Notes: a model not told the origin generated them from the sequence alone. Shown: positions 24,571-44,900, counted from the first letter of the whole stretch. The stretch: DNA of 63,447 bases, filler included, from Hyphochytrium catenoides (GCA_900088475.1; 11 parts of 11 records of this genome joined end to end with filler, not necessarily neighbours in it), one strand, 5' to 3'. Numbers and translations are program-made.

Positions 24571-24821
24571 ATGCATCTCTCTATCTTTGTGGTCTCTCTC
24601 CCTTTGCCTTCTCTCTCTTTCTCTTCTTCTCTTTTCATTCTGCTCTCACTTCTTGATCTTAGAGTCTCATGCTCCGGATGCAGCATTCTTTTCACCTCTT
24701 TGCTCTCCATCTACTGTCCCTTTCGCAGTTTGTGTGCCAGCTCTGGTACATTCTTTAAACGCCTTCCTATTTCTTGACAGTCACCTGTGTTATGGCTCGC
24801 TCGAGTCGGGATAAGGGTCTC

Positions 24822-24887
<66 letters not shown>

Positions 24888-25705
24888 TTTCTCTCTCTCT
24901 CTCTGTCGTTTCTCTCTCTCGTGTCTTTCTGTTCCCCTTCTTCTTTCCATCTTTTTGCACTTGAGATGATTGCTTTTTCTTCTAGATTTTCATTCTCCTG
25001 TCTTCAGTGTGGTCGGCTCGGCATTGATTCTCTAATAATAATCTCATCTTCTTGGCCATCTCTTTGTCGTCTTCTCCCCTCTTTTTGCTCTTCTTTTCTT
25101 GTCACTGTCTCTCTCTTCCTCTGTCTCTCATCGCACCAGAGAAGGGCTGCTAGTTCTGTCATCTTCTTCTTAACTCTATCTTCCGCTCGTTATCAAGGCT
25201 ACAGAGCTTACTACCGCTCAGAAGAAGAGGACAACTGAGAAAAGGAGGGGGAGGCAAGAACAAAAGATGGTAACAGATGTGCCCTTGTCGCATTAAGAAG
25301 AGAGAGAGAAGGATAGACAAGGGTTGTCTCCTTCATATAATAAGAGAGAGAGAGAGTGATCTCAGAACAGTGCTGAGATCAGCGGCGCTGATTCTCAAGC
25401 TGCTTTCATCTCAAGAGGGAGAGGACAACAGAAAGCACCAAGGCTAGAAAGGCATGACAGCAATCCTTAGAGCGAAGTAAGAAGCTGCATGGCCGTGACA
25501 AGATTGTCTCTCTCTCCCTCTCCTGGCGCACTCTCTCTTTTTCTCCTGGTACTGCGAGTCATCATCAGTGTGGGACGTAGAAATGGTTGATCTATAGGTT
25601 ATATAGCGCAGAGCAGATCCAAAGGTGTCAGAAAGAACGACCGCCACAAAGAGAGAGAAGAGCTGGAGAAAAAGCGTCGATTCTAGCGAGCTTATATCAT
25701 GAGCT

Positions 25706-26483
25706 CTAACCGGTGGTCAAACCTCCGACGGGAGGAGAGACTCTTGACGTCTTGCCCAGGAGAAGAGAAGGACGAACTTTAGCAGTGCCTGGGGCTCCAG
25801 CGCTGTGCTCTGGCCCGCCTCCTCCTCTTGCTCCCTTTTTAACCTTTGACTTGTGCTGGAAACGGCCAAAGGGATCCACTAACATCCTGAAGACTTCTTG
25901 CTCCATCTAACAAGGGACACGTGACACAGAAGGTAAGTGAGAGAGGTGAAGAGAGTGATTGAAAGAGAGGAGAGAGAGAGAGAGAGAAAGAGAGAGAAAG
26001 AAAGAATGATGGAGAGAGGTAGAGAGGGAGAGAAGCAGGTAAAAAGGGGAGATCGTATAGAAAGTGATGGGCAGAGAAGAAGAGAAAGAGCCTCTTTTAC
26101 CTTGTCAAAGATGCTCATCGGAAGGCTGCCGTCCTTTGTCTCTGCGATGGCTGACTGAGCATTCCTGAGCGCCTCCTGCCGAGCGCCCGCGCTCACATTG
26201 ATCTGGAGGTTGGCGCCTTCTTTAACATAGGTGTCGCATGTTTTCTGCACAAACTCTACGGCTTGGTTGGGGTTGTTGGCGATCTCATTTCTATAAAGCT
26301 CCAGCTGCATGATGAACAGCATGTTCTCCACTGCAAACTCCCGGACTGAGAGAATTGATAGCGATACGGAAAGGAGGAGGCAAAGGGAGATGAGAATAGT
26401 CTTTAGAGACGAGAGGAGAAGGAGGGCGTGATAATCGAGGAGAGGTAACAGAGGGGAGAAGGCCGACATGAGAAAGACAAAAT

Positions 26484-26573
<90 letters not shown>

Positions 26574-27182
26574 AGAGAGTCAGTAAGAGAGAGAGATAGG
26601 GAGCGTGAGAGAAATGGAGACAAGAGAGAGAGAAGCAGACAGACGTTGCTCACCAAGGTACTTCTTGAACTTCAGCTGCAGCGTCGTGTTGCCCTGCAGC
26701 GTCTCCTTCAGCTCTGTGGCGTTGATAACCTTTGTCTGGGGAACATTCTCATCCTCATCGCCGTCTTCTGCCACAAAACTGCTTAGGCGTTGCGACGACG
26801 CGGAGCCGCCGCTTCCCATCGAGAGATGAGTGACAGAGAGCCGCTTGGTGGCGACATGGTGTGCTGCCTTTGTGACGGTGTACGTCACGTTGTAGAGATA
26901 GTTCGCGCAAAAGACACAGGCGAAGATGAGCTGAGAGAGAGCAGCCAGGTCGTAGAAGAGCTGGGCGTGGTTGATGAGGTTCGGGGTGAACTGCAGGAGA
27001 AGAGTCGAGATAGGAAGGTCAGGGCGAGCTAGGTGTAGATAGGGACACAGGCGAGTAGACCAATAACTTGATATTAGTCCGAGAAGTAAGAAGAAAGATA
27101 GGGAGAGGAGATGGGAAAGAAAGGAAAGCGAGAGAAAAAAACAGAGAGAAGCACGGAAAGGATTGCAAAAAGGAAGAGAGGG

Positions 27183-27220
<38 letters not shown>

Positions 27221-29120
27221 GAAGAAGAAGATGAAGAGTAGTGCGTATGATGATATGGGGGAGCAGGGAGAAGGAGGTTAATGCTAGCACTGGCAAAGAG
27301 GGAGGATAAGAGCAGCTTGAGAGCATGATGGTTATGACCACGTCCTCGACATAGAAGGACTGCCCGGCAAGAAGAGAAGACGTACATCGACTGAGAAAGA
27401 GACTCCGAGAGAGAGGATTTGAGAAGAAGAGAGGAGGAGGTGTAGGTCAGGATCTTCACCTGCTTGAGCCAGAGAGGCAGCTCCAAGAAGAGATAACAGC
27501 GCTTATTGATGGCCGTGGTCCGCGTCATCAGGCGCCTCAGGGGATAAGACTCCTTCACGTCCTTCACAAGATCTGAGACCTTCTTCATCAGTCCCAGGAC
27601 CACATAGCCGTTCAGTATACGGGTCACGAACTAGAATGAGCAAAGAGAGAGTATCGGCAGCTCTTGTCAGGACGAAAGCCTAGCAGATGGATTATTGTTG
27701 CCAAGAAGGAGAACGTCGAGACAGAGGAGTAGACTTGATAACGTAACAGATAGGACGATGAGAGACAAAAGAACAGGAGAGATATAGCTGAGAACATCGA
27801 GAGGGAAGAGAGGGAGACCTGCGCGGTTGTGAAGGAAGAGCATCGTGGGTCTGAGACTGGGAGGGTGAGCTTGTCTGTGTCTTGAAGAAAGCGGGTGAGC
27901 ATGCCAAAGCTGGTGACCACAGCCGTCACGGCAATCACGAAGAGGTCAAACTTCATGGTTCTGACGGCGACCGTAGAGAGGAAGAGAGAGTGAGCGGGGC
28001 AGAGTCTTCAAACATCAGAAGCAGCTTACTCCTTTTTTTTGCACGTCAGTCCAATAAAGAAGGGAGACCGAGCAGCGAGAGAGAAAGGAAAGGGAGAGCC
28101 AGGATACCAAGAGGAAGTAGGTAGCCTTTAGCTAAGTTCCTCCGGTCCAGCTCTCCAGGAGTGTCAAAAAGATCCAGACAAAACAGAAGAGAGTCCAGAG
28201 GACCAAGAGACAGCGAGTGGGGGAGTGGAGACAATCAGAAGACAGAAGCAAAAGGTCCTGGATAAATGTCATTAACAATGATGCAGCTGATGAGGGAGCC
28301 GTCTCAGAGCCACAGCAAAAGGGAGAGAGAGAGACAGATGCAAAGGATCATAGAAGATGCACCCACTTGAGGATCTCCCGGTTCCTGAGGAACCAACTGT
28401 GGTGCTCTCCTTTCTCCAGAGCGTACTGTGCATTGTAGGAGATGAAGGTCCGGAAGGTGATGGAGAATGCAAGCCCTAGAGATGCCAAAGAAAGTGCCGT
28501 CTGTTAACCCGTTTGCCTCTCAGCCTTCGTCTTCTCATACTATAAGGGAAAGCAATGAACAAGGAGAGTGCCCACTGGCTGGGAAGGAGAAGAAGAAGAA
28601 GAGGAAGCTAGACTATTTCTATGAATGCCCTCCCGCACTTACCCGAAGCGACGAGATAGGTCCAGTTATTCACCAGGAGATGCAGCCAACAGGGCATGGA
28701 CGGAACCATCAGGAAGTGAGTGTACGCAAAGAAGCTCATCGGTGTCGCGATCACTAGCGCTGCGTACACAGGGACGTACAGCAAGGACACAGGGAATATC
28801 TTCCGATAGCGCAGGAGGCGGTAGAGTACAAGGCTGACGAGGGCACTGAGGCCGACTAGATAGAAGATAGAGAAGTAGAGGGCCCAGTCCCCTGTTGTCT
28901 TGATTGGATAGTTGGTCACGCAAGGGTTGGGCAGGTAGGAGGTAGAGTTGCAGTTTGCAATCCCTGGCGGCGAACCAAAGTCATGAGTGTAGGAGAGAGG
29001 AGGTGGGGTTGGGTCCGCGCTGGGCTCAGGGCTGTCTGCAACACCGCCTGTCGCGTCCTCCTCATGATGGTTGTTGGTCGAGCCAGCAGCGATGGTCCTG
29101 GAGGCGGTAAGAAAGTTCAT
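25706..29120 (-). CDS. 7TM-like membrane protein fused to C-terminal RGS domain, copy 1 (560 aa)
   Basis: Exons 29120-28643, 28475-28367, 27960-27819, 27630-27460, 26990-26654, 26345-26101, 25906-25706 total 1683 nt in frame. About 7 hydrophobic segments, then the RGS box FKKYLVREFAVENMLF...YVKEGANLQINVS...IFDKMEQEVFRMLVDPFGRF. Confidence 0.9.
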
Positions 29121-29541
29121 TTGCTCGGGACTTGGGGCTTTGACGACACGTTCTTAAGAAATGGAGCTGAGGCAGTGATTTTTTTTCCTTTCCCTGAAGT
29201 GAATCTCCTTCAAATAAGTAAGGCGCTCTAACCTGTCTCCTGTGTGTATAGCACTAGATTGGAGCGACCCTGTGCCGCCAGACGAGATAATAGAGATGCT
29301 ACGAGGATCACCCTTGCCTACTTTGTCTCCGGTACTATCCTTCATTTCTCTATCCATTCTTCCGCCAACCTGCATGACCCATGGACTCCAGCAAGTGCGC
29401 TGCTTCTGGACCGGCTGCGCCGACCAGCAGTGCCTGATGGGTCTTGAGATGGGTGCGCGCCTGACGTTTAGGATGATGGGCTTGTGGGCTGGCAAGACTT
29501 CCCGTCGCCGTCTGACTCTTCCCCATCCCCACTATCCCCTA

Positions 29542-29609
<68 letters not shown>

Positions 29610-31156
29610 CACTCTCTTCTCTTTGGCTGCATGTCTCTGTCTCTATTCGTCTTTCCTCTCTCTCTCTCTCTCTCTCTCTCTGTCTATCACTTTATTGGTC
29701 TCTCCCGTCCTTCTCTTCTCCATAGCTTTTGGGCCCTCCATCGCCCCCCATCACCAACCTGCTTGTAACGGACGGGTGTGGGTGGGACCGAAGTCAGGAG
29801 CCGTGGAGCACACATATATTATGGGAGCATGGCCTTCCACCCACCCATCACTCTCAAGGCTGGTAGCCTGAACGTCTGTTTTGGTATTCTTGGGCGTCGA
29901 ATAAGACAGAGTGCCTCCGATCTTAGACTTTCCAGGAGTATAAGAGCGGCGGGACATACAAGTAGAAGCGGTTTGGCGCGCTGGTCAGTGGTGCACTCAC
30001 GGCTCCAGGCAGCCCAGAGGCCAAGCCACTGGCCGAGCAGGGCAGTTAGGGTGCCGGGACAGGCAGACAGACACGCAGAAGGACAAGTCGGGAGCAAAGC
30101 AAGCCAACTAAGCCGCAGAGGGAGAGAAGAGACGGTAGGACGGACACCGGTAGGGTCCGAGGATGGAGTTAAAAAAGGGGAGAGACAGCACTTCCTGCTC
30201 AAGCTCCTCCTTCTTCTCTCACTGGGTGAAGGATGACATGACAAGATGTGCTGCAAACCATGTACCTTCTTGCTCGTTTGTCTTGCTGCCTAGGTTTTTA
30301 AAAGAAAGAATCCTGCTTGATATACCAGAGCCACCAGGCTATGGAGTTGTTTTGGCCTCCTCATGCACAGTCGCTGATGGATGGCAACCCTCACCGCCCG
30401 CCGTTTAGGTTTATGGTAGCCGGAGTCTCATCCTTCCTTTAGTTCAGTCGGATGTGAGCATCCTGCTTGTTTTCTCCTGAGGGCTTGTGATCTTGAGAAA
30501 TTAAGCACTCTGCTTCGTCCAAAGGGAAGGAGAGTGTGAGAGGGCCACAATAAGCCGCAGGAAAGTGGCGGGATTAATAGGCGCAATCAGCGAGAAAGGG
30601 AGGACCCTTCGCGAATGCAAAGAGTTCTGCCTTCTCTTTGTCTAGCTTCCTGAAGATTGCTACTTAAGATCAAAGGGCTCCATGCAGTTATCTCACATTC
30701 CTTCCTTCAGTATGTCTCCATCTGCGCCCATCCATGTTCTCGCTAGTCCTAATACGCATGTCTCCCAATAGAGTAAATAGAGGCAGAAGTGGAAGGACTA
30801 CTGCTGAGTTTGATTGGCGGAGATGCAGCGCCGGTAGCAGGGCTGCTAGTAGACAGTGCTACAAGTGAACTGTGCCTTCTTGGATATATATGTATAGTGC
30901 TTCAGTCCCCGCTTCCAACGTGCTGTCACACTCACCCTACCGCGAGTAAAAAATGAATATAGTGCGGTCTATATGTAATAGCTATACTACTGGTACATGG
31001 CACTCTGTGGTGAGTTCCTCTGCTCGCAAGTATCTCGTCGGTAGCAAAACAGGAGCTTCACCCCCAAAATTGAGGCAATCCATCAGCCCAGCGGCAGGTT
31101 GAAAGACTTATCCAAAGAATGTAAAAGTGGTTCCTAGCTAGGGTTGATGACAGCGG

Positions 31157-31375
31157 CTAAGACCCACTGGTGTCCCCAATAATAGGCGGGGACACCTTGG
31201 ACATCTTGCCCCGCACCACGGATAACTTGGCCTTGACTTCCGCTGGGGATCCTCCTTCCTCCTCTGCAGATGGCCCCACTTTCTTGGCTGCTCCTCCTCC
31301 TCCCTGGTGCGCCTTTGACTTGTGCTGAAATCGTCCGAAAGGATCCACTAGCATCTTAAAGACTTCTTGCTCCAT

Positions 31376-31412
<37 letters not shown>

Positions 31413-33965
31413 CCAGAATGGAGCTATGTCAAGAGAGGAACAAAGTCGTGCAATCATTTCGCTAAGTGATGTTGTTGATGAGGCCAAACGGTAACCCTAA
31501 GGAACAAACAAGTGCGTTTACCTTGTCAAAAATAGTTAGGGGAAGTCTGCCGTCCTTTGTCTCTGCGATGGCTGACTGGGCATTCCTGAGCGTCTCCAGC
31601 CGAGCGCCCGCGCTCACATTGATCTGGAGGTTGGCGCCTTCTTTAACATAGGTATCGCATGTCTTCTGCACAAACTCTACGGCTTGGTTGGGGTTGTTGG
31701 CGATCTCATTTCTATAAAGCTCCAGCTGCATGATGAACAGCATGTTCTCCACTGCAAACTCCCGGACTGACAAAAGAAAAAGAAGAGACAACAGGGGAGG
31801 GAGGTCGGTCGAAATTAGTTCCTGGAACGAGACCTCCATATCAGTCAATGTAACTAGCCGAAGACGAAGGAGGTGCACTCGTTGCCAGTAGTACTGAGAG
31901 GCAGCGCCCTGGTAGTATGACTTCCTAGTCTATCACCGGCGCTAAGAAGAACATATGAGAGAAACAGAAGCCCCGACTGGTGGGACATCGGGTGACTGAT
32001 AGCTCACCCAGATACTTCTTGAACTTGTTCTGCAACGGAGTATTTCCCTGGAGCATCTCCTTGAGCTCGGACGCATTATTCACTTTTGCCTGAGGTATCT
32101 CAACGTCTTCGTCGCCGTCTTCCCCTGCCGCTCTGCCGCTGCTTTTGGATTGGAGGCTTCCACGGGACAGATGAGTCGCAGAAAGACGCTTGGTAGCAAT
32201 GTTGTGCGCCGACTGAGTGACAGTGTAGGGCAGATTGTACAAATAATTTGTACAGAAGACAATGGCGAAGATGAGCTGGGAAAAAGCCGCCAGATCGTAG
32301 AAGAGCTGAGCGTGGTTGACGAGGTTCGGTGTAAACTGGTCGTAGTGCAACGGTAAAAAAAAGCGTTAGCAACAGTGAGAAGTTGAACACGAGCACTGAA
32401 TCCCAACGACGGAGCTAGCCGGTAGCAGAAGGCGAAGGCAGAACAAGGAGAAAGAATCTTTTGTCTTAACAAGTGGAGAAAAGCGAGGAAGGTGGCCCAC
32501 AGAGAGAGAAGAATGCAATCAACAAGACGAGGAAGTCCATATTATCTTCCGACCTGCTTGATCCAGAGAGGCAACTCAATAAAGAGATAGACGCGCTTGT
32601 TGATGCCAGTGACCCGGGTGTATAAACGGCGCAAGGGATAGGACTCCTTCACATCCTTCACCAAGTCGGCTACCTTCTTCATCAAACCCAGAACCAGGTA
32701 GCCGTTCAGTATCCGCGCAACAAACTGCCGGATAACCGTGCAAAAAAGGTAAGGAATGGTTTTGTGAGGGAGGGTTAAGGGCGGAAATCAGCGGTCGGCC
32801 CTCAACCGAAGGAAGCTCTTGTTAGATGCGATGATAAAGGGAGGGAGAGCATTTTTAGAGCTCAAGAGAGTTATCAAGAGAGATAATAACAAACAAAGGA
32901 GCTACTCGAGCGACAAAGAAGACGACCTATAGTACCTGTCCAGTGGTCATCGAGGAACAGCGCACGTCTGAGACCGTCAACGTCAGCTTTTCCGGATCTT
33001 GCAGGAAGCGCGTGAGCATTCCAAAGCAGCTGATGATAGCTGTAACAGCGACTACGAAGAGATCAAACTTCATGCCCCTGCTCACAGAGGTATTGAAGAT
33101 TTGAAGAAGGACGCAACTTTTAGCGGTGGCTCTACTGGTTCTTCTCGATACAAAGCAGGATTTGCACATACTTCAGAATATCTTTGTTCCTGATGAACCA
33201 GCTATTGAAATCTCCTTTCTCGAGAGCGTACTGCCCGTTGTACTGAATGAACGCTCTGAATGTGATCGAGAATGCAAGACCTGGCACAAAGAGATGGTTG
33301 AGAGAGAGAGGTCATTGAGAGCTTGATAGGGAAGCTAGAAGGGGCGGATACTTCATAGAATGGCGCTAGGGGAAGATGTCACGTTTCCCCGCTCTCTTGA
33401 TAATGCGGGGCAATGTTAGGCCGCGACATGTCGATATCAAGTAGAGGTGGAAAGTTGAAGGCTGGCAAAGAAAGAAGAATGGCCTCACGCAACTGGAGAG
33501 AGAGGCTAGGACGTCTGTTAGTAGTTGGGAGGAGGAAGTTGTCTCACCTGCCGGGACGAGGTACTGCCAATTTCCAAGCAGCAGATGCAGCCAGCACGGC
33601 ATGGACGGTATCAGGAGGGAGTGAGTATAGGCGAGAAATGTGACTGGAGTAACACTCGCCATGGCTGCGTACACTGGGACATAGAGCAGGGAGACCGGAA
33701 AGGTAGTTCTATATCGTACCAGCCGGTAGACGAGGAAGATGACGAAGCTGGTGAGGAATATGAAATAGATGATAGCGAAGTAGAAGGCCCAATTCCCAGT
33801 TGTTACGGAGGGAAAATTGCTGACGCAAGGGTTCGGGAGGTAAGTGGTAGAGTTGCAGCTTGCCACCCCTGGCGGGAGCGTAAACGTTGGTGGATCAGCT
33901 GAGTCTGCCGCCGATTCAGGGTCATTAGTACGAGTGCTGGGCACTAAGATAGTCGTGACCGTCAT
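31157..33965 (-). CDS. 7TM-RGS fusion, copy 2
   Basis: Same seven exons and intron phases as copy 1. Start MTVTTILVP (33965), RGS exon 31766-31522, last exon MEQEVFKMLVDPFGRFQHK...MSKVSPPIIGDTSGS*. Confidence 0.9.
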
Positions 33966-36145
33966 CCTATATGTCCGATGATCGTGATTCCTAACCAAAC
34001 AAGCCCTCACGACCAGTGAAAGAGACAGAAGAGGTAGAGAGCAGCAGCAGTGTCGGGAGAAAGAAATGACCAGCAAGACGAATTGTAGCTCTCCCCTACT
34101 TCCTGGCAGCAGTCGCTGGACTACCCTTTGGGCCTCCTAGAGCTTCCTAGTGCAATTGGAGTCTATCTGTAGCGTCCAAGGTTAAGCATCAAGGTTAAGC
34201 ATCATCCCAAGCAACACGAGCTAACTAAAGGAAAGTGCCGACCAAGGCAGGAGCGAGACTTGAGATCCAAACTAGAGGAAAAGAGGAATGCTCTAGGGCA
34301 TTTTTTGTAAAATAAATAACTCTTCTGCCTGAGCCCTGCTATCAGATGTCGGCGTGCTGAGCTGAGAGATGTGATTGTTAATCTACACGAAGGGCTCGTC
34401 CTCCAACATACATCCCTCTTGCAAGGCACATTCGTCCTTGTTCCAAAACTAATACCCTCTTTTGATCTTAAGTTGGCATTATGCTCACACCTCCAGTCCT
34501 CTTCCTGCTCTCCCTTCTCTTCTACCGTACAGCCCACGCATCCCTCCTCCTCCCTCGCTAAGTCGAAGTATGCTTCCCTTCCGCTGGCATTGCTTTCTTC
34601 GATAGTAGATCTAACAGGAGAGGGAACCAAGGGAAGCAGAAGAGAGATGGAAAGAAGACCAAGAACCCTGGTGTTAGGTTCGATGAGAGCCTTCCTCCTC
34701 CATGCACTTCCTACTTTCTTCTCACCTGGGTAGGTCGCTCGCTCCCCTCTCTCTCCTCTCCTCCCCTCTCTCTCTTCTCCCCTCTCTCTTCTCTCCTCTC
34801 CTCCCCTCTCTCTCTTCTCCCCTCTCTCTCCTCTCCTCTCCTTCCCTAGCTCTCTGCTCCCATCTGCCCTGCTTCGTGCTTGAGGCCTTGAGGCCTGTCG
34901 CTTCCCTTCCCCTTCCCGCTGGCCCATCGCCGCCCCTCCCACCCGCCGCAGTGTAACGGCCACTGGGCGCGTGGCCTGGGGGATGTCTGCCGCTCCTAGT
35001 ATTACTACTGCACGCAGTTCCAGCTTCTCAAGTATTACTAAAATGACCATTACTATGACTTTGCCCTCTAGAAAGAGTGTCAGTGGGAGAAAGGAGTTTT
35101 TTCTACAAATAAAGACCTCATGAACTGCGAGGCGGAGGGCGGGTGGGTGTGGAGGAGGAACAAGGTAAGTGCACTATTTGCTGGTTGGTGGTGGTGGTCA
35201 GGGGGCGAGGAAGGGGAGAGGGAGGTCATAATAGCCAGCGAGAAGGGGAAAGGACGGCACCAATGATTGAAGGCTGACAGTCAGACCCACATCGCCAAGG
35301 AAGACCGAGGAAGAACGAGAGGCCGCAGGTAAAGGGTGGCTCGTAAGTGGAGGACAGCAGACAGGGACCCACGAGAGAGGAATAAGACAGAGAAGAGGGG
35401 GAGAGGTAATTATGTAGGGGTGCGTTGAGCGAGGAGAGAAGAGGGAGGGGACGGTCAATAACGTAGACCAGGAAAGCTGGAGAGTGTGCTGATGGACCGG
35501 CGTAGGGCAGCACCACCTGCTCCTGGTGCCTGTAGATCGTGTATTTTCCTCCTACTTTTCTATAGGATAGGGCAGGAGGAGAGTACATGTTGCAGCTGCA
35601 CAATGTATGGAGAGCTCTACCCGACTACTTATAGCTGTCTTCTTGCTCTCCTTTTCTCTGATGAACTCGCTTACTTCCCGAGAAAGCTAGCCATAAAGCC
35701 CGTTGAGCTCGATAGTAAGTGTCGGAGGAGCACTTGAAATCGTTTCTCTTGCTGTCTAATTATCAGAGAGCATCAGTCAAGGGGTATGGGGTGGAACCGC
35801 ACTACTCCATGAGAGAATAGCGACGCGAGGAGCGGGAGAACTGCATCTATCTCTAACAAAGAGAGAATGGGAAGAACATGGGCACTTGTTGATTGGTACC
35901 TCACCCTTCTGGACGATGGAAGAGAGAAGAATAACTTTCTATTACGTGTCACGTTCTCTTCAGCTAAGCATAGCCAGGGGAGACTGCTGGTGCCCGTGTA
36001 TCGCTTAAATGGTTTAAAGAGGAGAATAATGAACGCTTGCCTTAAGCGCAAGGAAGCAGAACAAGGGAGGGCGAGGGCGAAGAGAAAGAAGAATGAACAT
36101 CGTCGTATCTTACAGGAACATCATGGAGGCGCTAATGAGGAAGCA

Positions 36146-38830
36146 CTATTGCTGATTGGTGCTCCCCGTCAACAGCTCGCCCAAGGGAGGAGAAACTTGA
36201 CTGGGCTTCTTTTTCGAGAAAAGAGAGGGTCGCTCTATTTTAGACCTGTGGCTTGAACCCTCGGCGCTGTTTGCGTTGGTCTCTATCGGCCTCACTGTCA
36301 CTGTCTGCCCACTCCCCTTTGTAGCTCCTCGGGCCCCAAACTTGTGCTGAAAGCGACCGAACGGGTCAACCAACATCTTGAATACTTCTTGCTCCATCTA
36401 AGAAATGTAATCATGGGCAAAGACCCGAGCGCGTGTCATCAACAAGCTATCCAAGATAGTGTGGATGAATAATATAGGGCTAAAATACCTTGTCAAATAT
36501 ATTGAGAGGTAGCCTTCCATCCTTGGTCTCTGCAATGGCTGACTGGGCATTCCTTATGGTCTCTTGCCGCGCGCCTGCACTGACGTTGATTTGCAGATTG
36601 GCACCTTCCTTCACATAAGTGTCGCATGTCTTTTGAACGAACTCCACAGCTTGGCTGGGGTTGCTAGCTATCTCCTTTCTATAAAGCTCAAGCTGCATGA
36701 TGAACAGCATATTCTCCACCGCGAACTCTCGAACTAGAGGTTACCAATGATGTCAGCAAGGGGGCAACAAGGAAGAAGCAAGTAGGGAAGTGGAGGAAAG
36801 CAGAGTTGTCGTGAACGCTTGATCATGTAGGCTCTGGTGCCACAGAGCAGGTAGGGGAGATGACGCTAGACAGGAGGAGGTGGCTAGAAGGAAAGAGTGA
36901 GCAGGAATTTACCGAGGTATTTCTTGAACTTGTTCTGGAGCGTAGTGTTTCCTTGAAGAACGTCTTTCAGTTCGCTCGCGTTATTGATTTTAATCTGGGG
37001 AACGCCTTCACCATCATCCTCCCCTTCTTCGTTTGCAGCAAAGCTGGAGCTGCGCTTGGAGGCAGCCGAAGTGCCTGCGTTGATTAAACGAGAGGCCGAA
37101 TGGCGTTTGGTGGCGACGTTATGTGCTGCCCTGGTGATGTTGTAGGGCAGGTGGTACATATAGTTGATGCAGAAAATAACTGCAAATATGAGCTGGGATA
37201 GCGCCGCCAAGTCGTACCATAGCTGGGCGTGGTCTATGAGGTTGGGAACAAACTAGAGGCCACACAAGAGGATCACTTTTAGTTGTTCACGAATGATTAG
37301 CATGGCAAGGATGTAGCACGAGGATCTGCGGCCGTTACATACAGGCGCATACGATAAACGAGTGCCACGGACCTGCTTCAGCCAGAGTGGAAGCTCTATG
37401 AACAGGTAGGCGCGTTTGTTGATGACAGCGATGCGGTTATAGAGATGTCTCATTGGAAAGGACTCCTTCACTTCCTTGTAGAGGTCTGCCACCTTTTTCA
37501 TCAGCCCCAAGACTAGATAGCCATTCAGTATCCTGGCCACAAACTACAAAGCACACAACACAAGTATGAGAAGAAGGGCCAAGCAAAGGTGTCCTACAGC
37601 TTTAAGGACTATTATCGAAGCAAGTACCCTTTGGGGCAACGCGAAAATACTATGACATGGGCTTCCTCCGCTATCCATAGTTCAAAAATTATGCGGAAGG
37701 AAGAAAGTCCCACGGCTGCATGGTGATCATACCTGAGCCGTAGTGAAGGAGGAGCAGCGTGGATCAGAAACGGGGAGATTCAGCTTCTCAGTATCTTGCA
37801 GCAAACGGGTGAGCATGCCGAAGCTAGTCAGCACAGCAGTAACAGAGACCACCATGACGTCAAACTTGATGGTCCTGCTCTCAAAAGAAGTCCGTTGAGC
37901 GGCAGAGGAAGACGTTAGGAAATAGAAAAAAAGAAGAAGCCAAAACGGCAACCACGTATTCCAATGACCGTAGCCCTAGAAAGGGGAATGAGCAGGTAAA
38001 TGTGCGGGCAAGGAGAACGATGCTATACTGAAAGTCTTCAATCATTGGAGGAACTGAGGCCCGATCCGTTGACCACATACTTCAGTAGCTCTCTTTGCCT
38101 GACAAACCAGTTATTCTGCTCCCCTTTTTCTAGTGCATACTGAGAGTTGTACTGGATGAAGGCTCTGAAGGTGATCGAAAACGCAACTCCTACAGTTTGT
38201 CATTCAACGGGAGTCAGGTGGCGCAGCTGCTTATCAATGTCAATAGTAAATATTGGAGTGAAGAAGAAAAAGAGAAAGGACCAAAGTGCACCTTTGCAGG
38301 AGGAGTGAGCCAAGGAAAAGAGAGACAACCGACGCTCCCGGAGGAGACAATAAAGGGGGACAGCGCCGCGGTTGCTCTTCCCTCCGGCTATGCTTACCTG
38401 CGGCCACTAAGTATGTCCAGCTGCTAATAATGATATGCAGCCAGCAAGGCATGGAAGGAATGAGTAAGGGGTGAGAGTAAGCGAAGAAACTCACGGGGGT
38501 GACGCCGACCATGGCAGCATTCACCGGAACAAAAAGCAACGAGACAGGAAAGACCCGGCGATAGCGCACAAGGCGGAATATTACGAAGCTGGCGAAGGAG
38601 GTGAGTCCAATAAGGTAGAGAACAGAGAAATAGAATGCCCAGTCGCCTGTTGTCTTGCTAGGGTAATTCATCACACAGGGATTGGGCAGGTATGATGTAG
38701 ACTTGCAGCTGGATATCCCAGGGAAAGGACTGGCAGTCGAGGGCGAGAGTGAGCTACCCTCATCTGCAGCAGGTACAATGCCATCAGTCAGGCCACCAGG
38801 GTCAACCGAAGAGAAGAAGGCGGTGTCCAT
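36146..38830 (-). CDS. 7TM-RGS fusion, copy 3
   Basis: Same exon architecture: MDTAFFSS...YLPNPCV...PCWLH...VREFAVENMLF...QINVS...DPFGRFQHK...SQVSPPLGELLTGSTNQQ*. Confidence 0.9.
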
Positions 38831-40499
38831 GATGTTAATGTAAGGGGCTGTTCCTCTTCTGCTTCTGCTGAGGAGTCGATGCTGTCCAGGACCAATGAGT
38901 GGTGCTTCCGCCTGCGCGGCAAGAAGGAAGATGTCACGTTGTTGATTGAGTAGGGCCCCGTTGCAGACAGACTCCGAGAAACCTTTTATCTTGTGCTAGG
39001 TAGTACGTCGCCGTGCTGAGTGCCATCTCTTGGGTGGTGCTTACGTAGCTAATTGGGACAGTAAACCCGCCACAGGCCCCGTCATCACAGAAGCTCGTTA
39101 TTAAAGAACAACCTGCAGCAAAGTCTGCGATGAAAGGAAGAGACCAGGCAGCTATTATCCTACCAGTCTGCCCTCCCTCCATGGTCGGCCCCGAGCCAAC
39201 AGCTGAGACTCCTCTTCTTTCAACTTCTATAAGGAGGAGGAGAGAGGTAGGCAAGGCAAGATGACGGTGATCAATGGGCGGGGTGTGGTTCCTATCTGTG
39301 CACTGTGTATGTTCCCTCTGGCTGAGCAGTGCACTTGGCTGCCAGCGCAGATCACCGCCACTGCGTGAGGAAGATGGCCCGCGTAACGGACTGGGGTGGG
39401 TGGGTGTCATCAGTGCAAGCGCTATGACAGCCATATTACTCCTTCCCACTCACTCCTCTTCCTTCACGTTCTGGTGGGTATGATTGCTTTTAGGTCCCCA
39501 ATAACCCAAGATATTCTAAAATTATTATGGAAGCAACTGCAAACTTTGGACTCCCTGTCTCATTTTTCCTTTTCCGTGTACTGTATTTGTAAAACTACCG
39601 CACACCAGAACTCATAGAGAATAATCTCGAGTCAATTTAGCATTGGACGGGAGCTGCCAATGACTCAATATCGTCGCTTTATCGTCCTCTGTACAAAGAC
39701 AGAAACCTCACCTCCAGGGTAGTGCTGTCTTTTCTACTTCCTGACAGGCAGCTAGAGGTCAAGGCCTCCCATCATTCCTCCTCATGCTCAGGGAAGACAA
39801 GCTGGCGTCCTTCGGCTATCCAGCGCAATAGCAGTCTAGACGCACTTCTCAAGGACAGAAGTAGTGGCAGATATGTTGCCCGGGTGTGGATCACGGGTCG
39901 CCGCTGATGACGCCCTCTGAAGAAGAACTACTGCTGCTTCTCTAGTTGAATGAAGGGAACTCGATGACAGACATCACCTTCTCGATATGGACTGGACATA
40001 CAACAGTCTTTGCTTGATACATGTGCTAAGGACACTTGAGAGCTACCGCCTTATTTTTTATCTCGCTTCCTACTCTGTCATTATCATTAACTCTGTGGTT
40101 CTTGTCTAGCCGCGAAACTCCTCCCCCTCTATCCTCCTCAACCTGTCGCTGCTGTGGCTGCACTTCCTTTTTCGACTTCTCTGTGCCCTTCGCTGGTGGT
40201 CATCTGTCTTACTCGAAAGGATCATACTGGTAAACTGACTGAAGCGGGAGATGCATAGAAGAACCCGGCGTCATGTGTGAATAAGTAAGATAAGGATAAT
40301 GCTACTGGCTTACAGTTGTGACCATCTACTCAACCTCCTCCTCAGAAGAGTGTCTATTCTGCCCTTCAATCTGGAGAGATCAAGCTCAGTTCTCCTCCTA
40401 CAAATTTCAACTACGGGTGCGAGCCCCAACTGAACTATGAGGGAGCTGCACTTGGAAGAAGAACGTCTTCTTCTGATGTCTTAGGAGCTAGTGCTACTC

Positions 40500-42828
40500 C
40501 TAAAGAGGATTGCTTTTGCTCATCATCTCCCCTACTGGAGGCGATACCTTTGATGCCTTCCGCACTACCAATGCATGGTTTGTGGAGGCGATACCTTTGA
40601 TGCCTTCCGCACTACCAATGCATGGTTTTCTTTCACGCCCTGTGAAATTTTCTCAATCCCTTTTCTGTCCCGTGGTTGTACTCTGGTTGTGCTCTTCTTT
40701 CCTCCTCTACTTCGGGCTTTATGTTGGAAACGTCCAAAAGGATCCACTAGCATCTTATAGACTTCGTGCTCCATCTGTTCACGAAGCGGAAGGGGTGGAG
40801 ATTCTTTAGCGTTAGGAAAAGAGAGCTTCACAAGTATAAGACAGCTATAGTTCTTCCGCACCTTGTCAAAAATCGTGACTGGAAGAGTCCCATCCGTAGT
40901 CTTCGAGATAGCCGTCTGCATTTCCGTTGATGGATGTTACCAGCCGCGCACCGGCACTGACGTTGATTTGCAATTTGGCGCCTTCTTTGACGTAGCTCTC
41001 GAATAGACTCTGCACAAACTCCACTGCTTGATCTGACTTCCACGCTATTTCTCGCTTGTAAGTCTCTAGCTGCATAAGAAAGAGCATGTTCTCCACTGCG
41101 AACTCCTGCACTGCGCAAAGATGAATACATGGACATAAAGATCAATCGTGGCAGGAAGCAGGAGTGGTAAACGGTAGCTAGCACGGGAAGGACGAGATGA
41201 AAGGGGGAAGAGTGCACAGGTGCTCCCAAATTAAATTGCCACAAAGTAAAGGAAGCATCCATAGTGACTGCGTACCCAGATAACTTTTGAACTTGAGCTG
41301 CAGTTGAACATTGCCCTGAAGCAGCTCACGAAGTTCTGTTGCATTGTTTATCCTGGTTTGGGGAACATCTTCGTCCTCGTCATCGTCCGGAGCTGAAAAA
41401 CTAGCCTCACGCCCGGATGCATCACTGCTGCTGGCGATGGGCAAATAGGTAGCAGAGAGGCGCTCCGTAGCTACAAGGTGAGCTGCTTTGGTGATAGTGT
41501 ATGGGACATTGTAGAGGTAGTTGGTGCAAAAGACAATAGCAAAGATGATCTGGGAAAGCGCCGCCAGGTCGTAGAAAAGCTGCGCGTGGTCTATAAGGTT
41601 CGGTACAAACTGCCAGTAGTAGGTGGATAGAAGAGTGAATGGTGGTTAGGGGTCTTCCTTTTTTTTTGCTGGAGGAGAGGATGGCATAATACTCCGTCGT
41701 TGCACTCCTCGAAACCAATGGAGAGGAAGGCAACAAGGAAGAACAGCACGACCCTTATTACGCATGTTTCTTTACTAACCTGCTTAATCCACAGAGGAAG
41801 CTCTAAGAACAGGTAGAATCGTTTATTGATGGCGGTCGTCTTTGTGTACAGAGGACGCAGCGGGTAGGATTCCTTCACGCTCTTGGAGAGATCTGTGACT
41901 TTCTTCATCAGTCCTAAGACCAAGTAGCCATTCAGGATCCGAGCAACGAACTGCATAAGGACAGCTCAGCCAGCTACAGGGATTCAGTGGACCTGTGCAG
42001 TGGTGAATGAGGAACACCTTGGGTCTGACACCGGTAGAGTCAGCTTGTCAGAATCTTGGAGAAGTCGAGTGAGCATGCCGAAGCTAGTGATCACCGCGGT
42101 AAATGAGACAACCAACACATCAAACTTCACGCCCCTAGGAAGGATACGAAGTCAGCCAGGAATAGGGCGCAGTGATAGCATAAGAAACGAACTTACTTTA
42201 GAATGCCCCTGTTCCTAAGATACCAGTTGTTTATGTCGCCCTTCTCTAATGCATACTGCGCGTTGTATTGGATAAAACCTCTAAAAGTGATGGAGAACGC
42301 GATCCCTAGAGGAGCCCCATGTGAGAGGGAAATCAGCCTACGATGAGTCAGCTGCTGGGAGGTAGGCGGAACGCTATTCTATTACTCACCTCCTGCCACG
42401 AGGTATTGCCAGTTGCCAATCAGAATATGCAACCAGCATGGCATGGAAGGAATCAACAGAGCATGAGTATAAGCAAGAAAGGTAACCGGGGTGACACCAG
42501 CCAGGCCTGCGTACACCGGGACATAGAGCAGGGACACGGGGAAGACTCTGCGGTAACGCACAAGCCGGTAAAGTAGAAGACTGACAAAGGAGATGAGAAA
42601 AGTCAGGTATATGACAGAGAAGTAGAAAGCCCAATCTCCGGACGTTTTGATGGGGACATTCGTCACACAAGGATTAGGCAAGTAGATAGTGGATTCACAG
42701 CTTTCTATGTCACTCGGAGGGTTTGATATAGTTAGAGTCGGCGATGAGCTGCCATCGACTGCAGCGGCTCCATCGTCCTTGAGGGAGAATATTTCAGTTG
42801 AGTCACTGGGAAGGGGCATCAGATTCAT
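40500..42828 (-). pseudogene. 7TM-RGS fusion, copy 4; TM region intact, RGS domain frameshifted and tail duplicated (pseudogene, GAP-dead variant, or splice-rescued)
   Basis: Exons 1-5 open and homologous to copies 1-3. In exon 6 there are 4 extra nt after GARL (about 40916-40940), giving a stop at 40866 while the homologous QTAISKTTDGTLPVTIFDK continues in another frame. A 47-nt tandem duplication lies at 40536-40628; the ancestral stop is at 40500. Confidence 0.7.
40536..40628. repeat. 46-nt perfect direct repeat (period 47) in last exon of 7TM-RGS copy 4
   Basis: tggaggcgatacctttgatgccttccgcactaccaatgcatggttt at 40536-40581 and 40583-40628. Confidence 0.95.
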
Positions 42829-44900
42829 GCCGGCGTAATGAAACCGCGGCCGGGTCAACGACTCGCACTAAGCACTTGCGTGCCTGATCCAAAGAGCTGA
42901 ATGCTGACAATAGTATTGACTCACTGAACCGCCACCCATTGTTCCTGCTGTTTCCCAAGCGGAAATGCCAACTCTGAGGCCGGCAAACAGACCGGCAGGA
43001 GCCGAGGCCACTTTAAGTTCTTCGCTCTCTCCCTTTCCCGTCCTGCCCAAACACATTTCTTGCAGTCCACTGGAGCCAAGTGGAGGCATGAGCATACTGG
43101 CCTCTAAAAAGAGTACTACTCGTACCTGCAAAGCTGGTCGGCACCGACAAGAGCGGTAGAGCTGATGTTATTGTGGGAGCGTGAAAAGGGAGGGAGGAGT
43201 AAGAAGAAGATCCGTCCATCTCCCTTCGCTTCAAGGCACACTGGACCAAGGACGGAGCTCGACTGACGGAGTATGCTGACGGAGTGCACTCAGCAGCTAC
43301 TGCCCCAGCACACAGGCTCCGGTCCGGGACGACAGGCGTAACGGACGGGGTGGATGGGACAGGGCTTCTCCTGGGCTTAATGCATGACCCACCCGAGGTT
43401 ATGGGGGAAAGATGGGTGGAGAGGGAACAAGGTGTGCTACTCATTTACTTGTGTGCTTGGGAGGATGAGGAAAGGAGGTTGCCTGTCTGCCTGCTGCTGG
43501 TGATGGGAGACAGGAAGAGCAGGCAACAGGGTGCCGTCTTTCTTCCTAGCAACGCGATAGACAGCTGCAGTGGCCTCTGAACAGAAGCTGCCCATTTTGC
43601 TGCTAAAGGCCTTTCGTGAAAGCGACAACAGAATACCTTATGTTACCTTCTTGCACCAGATACTCTCCAGACATAGACATCCACGGCGATGAGCATGTGC
43701 GCTGCTGACTCACGCATTAGCGACCGGAAATAGCTTGCTCATTGGAGAAGTCAATGATATACTCGCACTCTGTTACAGTTTGTTCTAATGAACGCTTGCA
43801 GCGCTGTTTGTGGCCGGACCATCGGAGGTCCTTGTCCCATGATCCGGAAGGGAAGGGGTGGAAGAGGTGGATATCCTAGACAATGCACTGCTATTACGTT
43901 CTGCCTTGAGAGAGAAACTACTATGATCATCGTTTGTTTTCACCAGCCATCTGCCTCCGTTTTTTATGGTATTACAAGTCAAAGGAGCGCAGACGACCAA
44001 GGACAGCCTTAGGGTAGATGAATGTCGTGACTCAGTCCACCGTGAAAAGTAGAGCAGACGAGAACTCCGGCCGCTGCTATTCTGCCCGTTCTTCTTTGCT
44101 ATTGAACCAAGGCTGATTCATATGGGCGTGCGAAGACGCCTCAGCGGGCGATGCAAAAGCTCAGCTAAAATCACGGATTGATGGGACTACAAACGGGAAG
44201 GAAGACGATTAGCACAGGCCACCCTTGGCCATCAGCTGCTGCGCTTACGGATACGTCATTAGCGCAAGAAAAAACTTCTTACAATCATTAGGGAGTGAAG
44301 ACGAAGAGCTCTGGCGCTGACCGCTGACGATATTAGAACAGACGAAGCTAGGAAGAGGTCGATTGACAACGGAAATGCCTATCATAGCTTACTGGGGAAC
44401 ATTAGTAGTGTTTTGCATATCTACAGAGGTGGGATTTCCAACTGCACCATCTAACGTTCAATTGCTTAGTTCCTCTAGATCTTTGTCGGTAGCTATAGCA
44501 GCAGGCAACATGTCTAATAGACTTCCAGAAGCCCCGCGTACCTTCACCGTGCAAGGTGAGTTCATGTGCGATCTCTCTGATCTCAAGTGGCTATAAAGTC
44601 GTAAAATATCAAGGCTCGGAGGTAGCCGAACATCCCGTTGCCGTTAACTACCTTTCCTTCCCATCATGATATCGCCCACCGGTGGCGATACCTTAGAAGT
44701 TTTCCGCCCTATTAGTTGTTGACCAGTCTTGTCTCCGGATTGACTGCCTCCATTGTTGAGAGCAGTCCGGTCACGACGTACCAACCGGCGCGCTAACAGA
44801 NNNNNNNNNNNNNNNNNNNNNNNNNNNNNNNNNNNNNNNNNNNNTTAATTAATTAANNNNNNNNNNNNNNNNNNNNNNNNNNNNNNNNNNNNNNNNNNNN

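What the first reader, a model, noticed from the sequence alone, without database searches (positions are those of the whole stretch)
25706..42828. Tandem array of four 7TM-RGS receptor-GAP fusion genes
Seen: four same-strand, head-to-tail genes on one segment with identical 7-exon structure. Each has a Cys-pair N-terminus (CxSTxYLPNPCV) and about 7 hydrophobic segments, with a Cys at the top of TM3 (PCW) and a Cys in the following outer loop (DPRC/DVRC). A Ser-rich/acidic linker leads to an RGS box that keeps the G-alpha-contact motifs (EFAVEN, QINVS Asn, DxFxRF). Established: 7TM-RGS fusions (Arabidopsis RGS1, fungal GprK-type, some protists) are GAPs rather than GEFs, and in plants they control a self-activating G-alpha. 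Inference: a locally expanded receptor-GAP family, with divergent N-termini and tails on a conserved RGS output, acting as a diversified ligand-sensing input to G-protein signalling in a probable stramenopile. Segment 6 is only weakly hydrophobic, so the 7TM count is tentative.
Basis: partly seen in the sequence, partly recalled or inferred. Interest (0 to 1): 0.85.

Follow-up and report, generated by a model that had tools for sequence, protein, structure and literature searches.

The report
Tandem 7TM-RGS receptor gene array
This is a real tandem cluster of old duplicate genes, each joining a GPCR-like seven-helix membrane domain to an RGS (G-protein off-switch) domain; the design is already known from plants, fungi and many protists, and one copy here is visibly damaged.

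Summary
Four minus-strand, head-to-tail genes (25706-29120, 31157-33965, 36146-38830, 40565-42828) share seven exons, intron positions and phases, and all introns are GT-AG.

Spliced products are 543-563 aa and 65-72% identical. Synonymous sites are saturated and dN/dS is about 0.1, so these are old, selected paralogs, not alleles or misassembly.

The RGS reading is supported:
- Pfam RGS matches exon 6 of all four copies, below cut-off because the domain is split over three exons.
- An exon-6 profile finds solved RGS domains.
- A collinear full-length relative with one uninterrupted ORF (P0005) passes Pfam RGS.

The 7TM reading is supported through that relative. Its model has seven helices, and only GPCRs match it (class C best, Z 15-16).

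- Copy 4 is damaged: +4 nt breaks the frame in the RGS exon, and a perfect 47-nt tandem duplication truncates the tail.
- A fifth copy's tail lies at 44647-44800, cut by the piece's edge.
- Divergence is concentrated in the N-terminus, linker and tail, not the outer loops, so "diversified ligand sensing" is weak.
- "Stramenopile" is untested.

7TM-RGS proteins are already known to be widespread. This is a sequence-divergent new member of a known kind, of moderate interest.

The parts
25706..29120 (-). Copy 1, intact 7TM-RGS gene, 560 aa, 7 exons
   Evidence: Exons 29120-28643, 28475-28367, 27960-27819, 27630-27460, 26990-26654, 26345-26101 and 25906-25706. All introns are GT-AG, 167-469 nt. 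blastp against the full-length relative P0005 gives E 1e-65 over residues 58-510.
31157..33965 (-). Copy 2, intact 7TM-RGS gene, 543 aa, 7 exons
   Evidence: Exons 33965-33548, 33280-33172, 33077-32936, 32724-32554, 32335-32008, 31766-31522 and 31375-31157. E 3e-69 against P0005.
36146..38830 (-). Copy 3, intact 7TM-RGS gene, 563 aa, 7 exons
   Evidence: Exons 38830-38398, 38189-38081, 37874-37733, 37543-37373, 37252-36913, 36733-36489 and 36397-36146. E 3e-66 against P0005.
40565..42828 (-). Copy 4, same layout but damaged; probable recent pseudogene or RGS-truncated copy
   Evidence: Exons 42828-42390, 42305-42197, 42134-41993, 41950-41780, 41609-41276, 41110-40862 (frame break inside) and 40774-40565. 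Introns are 84, 62, 42, 170, 165 and 87 nt. The 7TM part is as conserved as in the other copies (dN 0.15-0.16), but RGS dN is 0.18-0.19 against 0.04-0.06 among copies 1-3.
40916..40941 (-). Frame break in exon 6 (RGS box) of copy 4
   Evidence: The 3' part of exon 6 is 104 nt against 100 nt in copies 1-3. The straight reading ends in a stop two codons before the exon end. A 25-nt GT..AG segment (40916-40940) would keep the frame but remove 7 residues. A contig of run X1 (40599-42495) and one of X2 (40599-41840) cover this place with no difference.
40536..40628 (-). Perfect 47-nt tandem duplication in the last exon of copy 4
   Evidence: TRF reports period 47, 2.0 copies and 100% matches. The duplication shifts the frame after the VSPP motif and gives an early stop. 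A 61-nt contig at full depth crosses the junction of the two units in both runs.
44647..44800 (-). C-terminal tail of a fifth copy, cut by the edge of the piece
   Evidence: The minus-strand frame reads the family's tail motif S-K-V-S-P-P-V-G, then 10 residues and a stop at 44647-44649. tblastn of the copy 1 tail gives E 0.097. The position is 1.8 kb beyond the ATG of copy 4, which matches the 1.7-2.2 kb spacing of the other copies.
26101..26345 (-). Exon 6 of copy 1, the core of the RGS box; equivalents are 31522-31766, 36489-36733 and 40862-41110
   Evidence: Pfam PF00615 matches profile positions 21-82 of 117 at 15.8-20.3 bits in all four copies. A profile of these exons hits 26 solved RGS domains, with RGS16 at E 4.8e-5. 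Copies 1 and 2 are 95% identical in DNA here, with dS 0.36 against more than 1 elsewhere, which indicates gene conversion.
28917..28952 (-). N-terminal extracellular Cys-pair motif (C-x-S-T-x-Y-L-P-N-P-C-V) of copy 1; the same motif is in exon 1 of copies 2-4
   Evidence: The motif is invariant in the four copies. It is shared with the fragments P0001 and P0002 but not with P0003, P0004 or P0005.

Best explanation
The segment holds a tandem array of old paralogs: three intact, one damaged and a fifth cut by the edge. They belong to a sequence-divergent family of 7TM-RGS proteins.

Each intact product has these parts, in order:
- a short acidic N-terminus on the outside, with a conserved Cys pair;
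- a GPCR-type seven-helix bundle, with the usual Cys at the top of helix 3 and a Cys in the second outer loop;
- a cytosolic Ser-rich/acidic linker;
- an RGS box that keeps the residues that touch the switch regions of G-alpha;
- a basic tail with a conserved S-x-V-S-P-P motif.

The most likely mechanism is inferred by analogy, not shown. The protein is a membrane-anchored GTPase-activating protein that holds a G-alpha in the GDP state. A signal acting on the helix bundle, or phosphorylation of the linker or tail followed by removal from the membrane, relieves that brake, as in Arabidopsis RGS1.

The copies differ mainly in the N-terminus, linker and tail, so they probably differ in regulation more than in ligand. 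Copy 4 has recently lost an intact RGS reading frame.
For: Gene models have conserved intron positions and phases.

Selection: dS is saturated and dN is about 0.2. dN/dS is 0.04-0.12 in the 7TM part and 0.01-0.13 in the RGS box.

RGS:
- Pfam PF00615 matches exon 6 of all four copies.
- The exon-6 profile hits RGS16, RGS8, RGS5, RGS3, RGS6, RGS4 and others; 26 of 27 hits are RGS proteins.
- Relative P0005 scores 46.8 bits against a cut-off of 23.9.
- The equivalents of RGS4 Glu87, Asn88, Asn128, Asp163 and Arg167 are kept (alignments). Their role is established knowledge of the RGS4-Gi-alpha1 complex.

Fusion:
- Copies 1-4 align to P0005 over about 450-470 residues, E 1e-65 to 3e-69.
- P0005 is one uninterrupted 458-codon ORF.
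- A second relative, L002, has the TM and RGS parts in series and shares the intron after T-T-x-Q.

7TM:
- The loops follow the positive-inside rule, with the N-terminus out and the RGS box in.
- The AlphaFold model of P0005 residues 1-335, made with the window's exons in the alignment, has pLDDT 72, pTM 0.62 and seven long helices.
- All top matches are GPCRs. Foldseek gives its top 50. VIA gives Z 14-16 over 230-266 residues, with class C best. The unbiased wide search gives the same.
- The shape match in the ESM Atlas is TM 0.70 over 296 residues to a 483-member cluster in which 68% carry RGS. The nearest clusters by features also carry RGS.

Distinct loci: contigs of two DNA runs are identical to the window and have even depth.
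Against: No RNA data exist for this organism, so splicing and a single mRNA are inferred.

On the window's own sequence, Pfam RGS stays below the curated cut-off, because the domain is split over exons 5-7 and the spliced protein could not be handed to the tool.

The fold was modelled on a relative that is 31% identical, not on the window's protein. Z of 14-16 is only a little above what helical bundles can reach by chance, according to the tool's own note.

Helices 5 and 6 are weakly hydrophobic.

No G-alpha, ligand or GAP activity is known for this organism, and its lineage is unknown.
Confidence: 0.72

Rival explanations
1. The proteins are ordinary activating receptors (exchange factors for G-alpha) that carry their own RGS box in cis to shorten the signal. 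They would not be pure GAP receptors of the plant type.
For: The helix bundle matches G-protein-coupling receptors of classes C and A equally well. de Mendoza et al. 2014 (PMC3971589) note that 7TM-RGS proteins and canonical GPCRs coexist in several lineages, and that the GAP/GEF distinction is blurred.
Against: Wherever they have been tested, 7TM-RGS proteins act as GAPs on fast-exchanging G-alpha (Arabidopsis and Trichomonas; PMC3865004). Nothing in the sequence shows exchange activity.
Confidence: 0.15
2. The RGS box is a scaffold or binds something other than G-alpha, as in sorting nexins, axin or GRKs; the organism might even lack G-alpha.
For: Some RGS domains have lost GAP activity, and one eukaryote has RGS without G-alpha (PMC3971589). 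The genome outside this piece could not be searched.
Against: All five classical contact positions are kept. The box is the most constrained part of the protein in copies 1-3: dN is 0.04-0.06 while synonymous sites are saturated for the pairs with copy 3 (the 1-2 pair is homogenised by gene conversion, dS 0.36).
Confidence: 0.08
3. The TM exons and the RGS exons belong to separate neighbouring genes, or the four copies are alleles or an assembly artefact.
For: No RNA evidence is available. Both DNA runs come from one study and may be the source of the assembly.
Against: The same 7-exon chain with matching phases recurs four times, with no stop or start between the parts. Relative P0005 encodes both parts in one ORF. 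The copies are only 65-72% identical and synonymous sites are saturated. The intergenic DNA is unique. Contig depth is even across the genes and the flank.
Confidence: 0.03

Closest known systems
Arabidopsis RGS1 (plant 7TM-RGS receptor-GAP)
   Same: The order of parts is the same: N-terminus outside, seven helices, then a cytosolic C-terminal RGS box followed by a Ser-containing tail. The AlphaFold model of the AtRGS1 bundle is also reported to be closest to class C and class A GPCRs (PMC11580166). The model of this family's relative gives the same result.
   Different: Sequence relationship to AtRGS1 was not tested, because no AtRGS1 sequence was on hand. This family has a conserved N-terminal Cys-pair motif and its own tail motif (S-x-V-S-P-P). 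It is multi-copy in tandem, whereas plants have one copy or none (PMC3971589).
Protist and early-fungal 7TM-RGS proteins (Trichomonas TvRGS; chytrids, ichthyosporeans, 'many bikonts'; ESM Atlas clusters of about 470 aa from Endomyxa, Oomycota and Zoopagomycota)
   Same: The architecture and size are the same. The shape match is TM 0.70 over 296 residues to a 483-member cluster in which 68% carry RGS. The nearest clusters by language-model features all carry RGS. Lineage-specific expansions of RGS genes are known (PMC3971589).
   Different: HMMER cannot link them. A profile of exon 1 found only five proteins among 1.84 billion representatives, four of them fragments. The window's proteins are also about 90 aa longer, in the N-terminus, linker and tail.
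Class C GPCR seven-helix domains (GABA-B, CaSR, mGlu, TAS1R, GPR156, GPR158)
   Same: These are the best structural matches: Z 14-16, rmsd 3.5-4.3 A, 230-266 residues. The family also has a Cys at the top of helix 3 and a Cys in outer loop 2. GPR158 recruits an RGS protein (RGS7) in trans (title of PDB entry 7ewp).
   Different: There is no Pfam 7tm_3 match. There is no Venus-flytrap or Cys-rich ectodomain; the ectodomain is only 55-78 residues. RGS is fused in cis.
R4-type RGS domains (RGS16, RGS8, RGS4, RGS2)
   Same: These are the top hits of the exon-6 profile. The E-F-x-x-E-N and (I/V)-N motifs align, and D-x-x-x-R-F in the last exon matches the D163/R167 region of RGS4.
   Different: The sequences are very divergent; the solved RGS hits score only about 20-27 bits. 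The position of RGS4 Ser85 is Ala. The domain is split over three exons.

Membership tests
7TM-RGS receptor-GAP architecture | An RGS domain (Pfam PF00615) in the C-terminal part | tested here: met
   Exon 6 alone scores 15.8-20.3 bits on profile positions 21-82 of 117, below the 23.9 cut-off because it is a piece of the domain. The exon-6 profile hits 26 solved RGS domains, best E 4.8e-5. The collinear relative P0005 scores 46.8 bits, E 4.5e-12. The spliced window protein itself could not be scanned.
7TM-RGS receptor-GAP architecture | Seven membrane helices N-terminal to the RGS domain, with a GPCR-like fold | tested here: met
   Seven hydrophobic segments are arranged according to the positive-inside rule. 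The model of the relative's residues 1-335 has seven helices and pLDDT 72. Only GPCRs match it, at Z 12-16. Caveat: the fold was modelled on a relative that is 31% identical, with the window's exons in the alignment.
7TM-RGS receptor-GAP architecture | Both parts on one polypeptide (one mRNA) | tested here: inconclusive
   No RNA run exists for this organism. In support, the in-phase exon chain recurs four times, and P0005 is one uninterrupted ORF.
7TM-RGS receptor-GAP architecture | The G-alpha contact residues of the RGS box are kept | tested here: met
   The equivalents of RGS4 Glu87, Asn88, Asn128, Asp163 and Arg167 are present in all copies. In copy 4 the last two lie beyond the frame break.
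7TM-RGS receptor-GAP architecture | GAP activity on a cognate G-alpha encoded in the same genome | not testable with these tools
   Only this 22-kb piece is available, and there is no assay.
Class C GPCR (Pfam 7tm_3) | A sequence match to PF00003 | tested here: not met
   No Pfam hit other than RGS at E up to 1, either on P0005 or on the window's exons.
Class C GPCR (Pfam 7tm_3) | A large extracellular ligand-binding domain (Venus flytrap, with or without a Cys-rich domain) | tested here: not met
   Only 55-78 residues precede helix 1.
Class C GPCR (Pfam 7tm_3) | The class C type seven-helix bundle | tested here: inconclusive
   Class C chains rank first (Z 15-16), but class A chains follow within 1-2 Z units.
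Plant RGS1 orthologue group | Detectable sequence homology to AtRGS1 over the helix bundle | not tested

The most novel reading that the evidence does not exclude
The paralogs work as class-C-style dimers, and an RGS-dead copy such as copy 4 acts as a non-catalytic partner that tunes GAP-competent partners, as in GABA-B or taste receptors. In that case the array would encode a combinatorial receptor-GAP system rather than redundant copies. Three points are compatible with this: the best structural matches are obligate-dimer class C receptors; AtRGS1 is reported to form dimers (PMC11580166); and the helix bundle of copy 4 stayed as constrained as the others while its RGS box diverged three to four times faster and then broke.
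Probability: 0.08. Interest if true: 0.6.

Novelty: new member of a known kind. Interest (0 to 1): 0.33.

Why it matters
7TM-RGS proteins are the receptor class that brakes G-alpha rather than activating it. They are the main known membrane regulators of self-activating G-alpha in plants and some protists.

This array adds a sequence-isolated family with a clear GPCR-type bundle, a conserved outer Cys motif and a conserved tail motif. It also gives a natural series of paralogs: three intact, one freshly broken and one with a gene-converted RGS exon. That series could be used to map which parts carry regulation.

It does not change the picture of G-protein evolution. The architecture and its lineage-specific expansions are already described (PMC3971589).

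Tried and rejected
1. Folding the whole relative P0005 with a shallow alignment gave pLDDT 50 and was discarded.

2. Alignments that mixed all exon pieces with P0005 were misaligned by MAFFT (A2, A5, A7). Only A6 was usable.

3. Word-index protein searches with P0005, both whole and RGS part, found only P0005 itself.

4. A scan of JGI metagenome contigs with the exon-1 profile found no relative.

5. Attempts to name the organism from the flanks all failed. Pfam on ten flank and intergenic ORFs gave nothing above cut-off. Atlas features gave only scores below 0.8. The homologue search found nothing. There was no Rfam family and no tRNA.

6. Atlas features for exon 1 alone gave only generic N-terminal fragments of other 7TM families (GPR175, TOM1, GPR137). 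This is a lead, not a placement.

7. phmmer of exon 6 alone against the PDB gave only chance helical-repeat hits. The profile of the four copies plus two relatives was needed.

9. The spliced window proteins could not be handed to Pfam, the structure tools or the homology tools, because they have no reference. They were analysed only in scripts.

10. Rejected readings: alleles or misassembly, and separate TM and RGS genes (see the rival explanations).


Full report
**What is in the sequence.** The piece (22470-44800) has about 50% G+C and many (TC)n/(GA)n microsatellites. Comparing it with itself shows four sets of seven conserved blocks on the minus strand, with nothing shared between the sets except microsatellites.

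I built gene models by hand for copy 1 and by junction enumeration for copies 2-4. All introns are GT-AG. Intron positions and phases are identical in the four copies. Exons 2, 3, 4 and 6 have the same lengths (109, 142, 171, 245 nt) in copies 1-3.

The spliced products are 560, 543 and 563 aa for copies 1-3.

**Age and reality of the copies.** The proteins are 65-72% identical. Synonymous sites are saturated between all pairs (dS above 1 or not computable), while dN is about 0.2. dN/dS is 0.04-0.12 in the helix region and 0.01-0.13 in the RGS region.

These are therefore old duplicates kept by selection, not alleles and not an assembly artefact. Contigs from two DNA runs of one study match the window base for base over 37300-43200. 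Their depth is even across genes, spacers and flank. These runs may be the source of the assembly, so this is not fully independent support.

Exon 6 of copies 1 and 2 is 95% identical in DNA, with dS 0.36. This indicates gene conversion.

**RGS box.** The domain is split over the end of exon 5, exon 6 and the start of exon 7. Only pieces could be given to the tools by reference.

- Exon 6 alone matches Pfam RGS (PF00615) in all four copies. The match covers profile positions 21-82 of 117 at 15.8-20.3 bits, below the 23.9 cut-off.
- A profile of the four exon-6 translations plus two relatives hits 27 PDB sequences at E up to 0.1. Twenty-six of them are RGS domains: RGS16 at E 4.8e-5, then RGS8, 5, 3, 6, 4, 2, 10, GAIP, 1, 7 and 18.
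- The alignments place E-F-A-V-E-N on RGS4 83-88 and the Asn of Q-I-N-V-S on the RGS4 Asn128 position. D-P-F-G-R-F in exon 7 falls on the D163-R167 region.

That these residues contact the G-alpha switch regions is established knowledge of the RGS4-Gi-alpha1 structure. It was not tested here.

**Relatives and the fusion.** An exhaustive HMMER search with a profile of exon 1 (helices 1-3) found only five proteins among 1.84 billion representatives. Four are fragments.

The fifth, P0005, is 458 aa and is one uninterrupted ORF on a 2.6-kb contig of a public run. It passes Pfam RGS at 46.8 bits. It aligns with copies 1-4 from helix 1 to the end of the RGS box, at about 31% identity and E 1e-65 to 3e-69.

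A second gene from the same sample (L002) has the TM part and the RGS part in series. It shares the phase-0 intron after T-T-x-Q with the window's intron 3.

This is the best available evidence that the TM and RGS parts form one protein. No RNA run exists for the window's organism.

**Seven helices and fold.** Hydropathy gives four strong and three weaker segments. With the N-terminus outside, every inner loop is rich in Lys/Arg and the outer loops are not, and the RGS box ends up in the cytosol.

The Cys in P-C-W (top of helix 3) and the Cys in R-C-S-S (outer loop 2) are conserved in all relatives. The N-terminal Cys pair is found only in the window and in two fragments.

A model of whole P0005 with a thin alignment failed, at pLDDT 50. 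A model of residues 1-335, with the window's exons and L002 pieces in the alignment, reached pLDDT 72.2 and pTM 0.62 and showed seven long helices. The searches with that model gave:

- Foldseek: GPCRs only in its top 50. E-values are weak (0.03-0.17) and TM-scores are 0.32-0.49.
- VIA-align on Foldseek's top chains: Z 14-16 at rmsd 3.5-4.3 A over 230-266 residues. Class C receptors (CaSR, mGlu, GABA-B, TAS1R, GPR156, GPR158) come first, with class A close behind.
- The search over 48,161 chains that does not depend on Foldseek: the same result. All 50 best are GPCR bundles or a designed GPCR-like fold, at Z 12.4-15.2.

The tool warns that helical bundles can reach Z of about 14 by chance. The argument therefore rests on full coverage and on the uniform identity of the hits, more than on Z alone.

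In the ESM Atlas the model matches a 472-aa cluster at TM 0.70 over 296 residues. The cluster has 483 members, 68% carry RGS, and it is mostly Endomyxa. The nearest clusters by sequence features are RGS-bearing membrane proteins of Zoopagomycota, Oomycota and Endomyxa, even though only the TM part was submitted.

**Copy 4 and a fifth copy.** Copy 4 has three oddities.

- The 3' part of its exon 6 is 4 nt longer than in the others. Read straight through, the frame ends in a stop two codons before the exon end, so the last third of the RGS box would be lost. A 25-nt GT..AG segment (40916-40940) would restore the frame at the cost of 7 residues, but that is shorter than any other intron here.
- Its last exon has a perfect 47-nt tandem duplication (40536-40628). 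This shifts the frame right after V-S-P-P and ends the protein early.
- Its intron 3 is only 42 nt and contains in-frame stops.

The contigs of both runs carry the same bases, and a contig crosses the junction of the duplication.

The helix region of copy 4 is as conserved as in the others, but its RGS box has diverged three to four times more. The simplest reading is a recent loss of function of a copy whose RGS box was already under weaker constraint.

At 44647-44800 on the minus strand, a frame reads the family's tail motif (S-K-V-S-P-P-V-G) followed by a stop. It lies 1.8 kb beyond the ATG of copy 4, which is the usual spacing. The array therefore continues beyond the piece.

**Interpretation.** The architecture, the topology and the retained contact residues make a membrane-anchored GAP for G-alpha the most likely function. 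Regulation would come through the helix bundle and through the Ser-rich linker and tail, as shown for Arabidopsis RGS1 (PMC3865004; PMC11580166). This step is inference.

The outer loops and helices are nearly the same. The fast-evolving parts are a short, low-complexity N-terminal stretch (dN 0.67-0.93), the linker and the tail.

The lineage could not be determined, so "stramenopile" remains a guess.

**Novelty.** 7TM-RGS proteins are described in plants, Trichomonas, many other "bikonts", chytrids, filastereans and ichthyosporeans. Large lineage-specific RGS expansions are also described (PMC3971589).

This locus is a new, sequence-isolated member of that known kind, with a clear GPCR-type bundle. 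Interest is moderate to low.

Noticed in passing
window 44647-44800 (-): The tail and stop of a fifth family member lie at the very edge of the piece, so the array is longer than the four genes reported.
   Followed up: partly
window 26096-26352 and 31517-31770: Exon 6 of copies 1 and 2 is 95% identical in DNA, while their other exons are 70-77% identical. dS is 0.36 here against more than 1 elsewhere. This looks like a gene-conversion tract over the RGS core.
   Followed up: partly
window 22782-24570 (+): Two long plus-strand ORFs (252 and 269 aa), rich in Glu/Arg/Ser low-complexity sequence, converge on copy 1. They have no Pfam family, no homologue and no Atlas neighbour. It is unclear whether they are a real gene.
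   Followed up: partly
window 22618-22727, 24818-24920, 25939-26033, 26484-26633, 27175-27219, 29547-29685, 34747-34865: Long (TC)n/(GA)n microsatellites lie in introns and spacers. They produce the many spurious Ser-Leu and Glu-Arg ORFs on both strands.
   Followed up: no
window 40565-42828: The introns of copy 4 (84, 62, 42, 170, 165, 87 nt) are much shorter than those of copies 1-3 (91-469 nt).
   Followed up: no
L003 1-262: An 86-aa fragment with the family's N-terminal Cys motif (P0002) sits at the end of a contig of a MAG labelled Thermoanaerobaculia. The rest of the contig carries bacterial genes (VIT1, Na/H antiporter). This is probably a chimeric contig or eukaryotic contamination of the bin.
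   Followed up: no
L001 and L002 (one public run): The same sample holds one intronless family member (P0005) and one member with introns (L002). L002 shares the window's intron 3 position but has its other introns elsewhere.
   Followed up: partly
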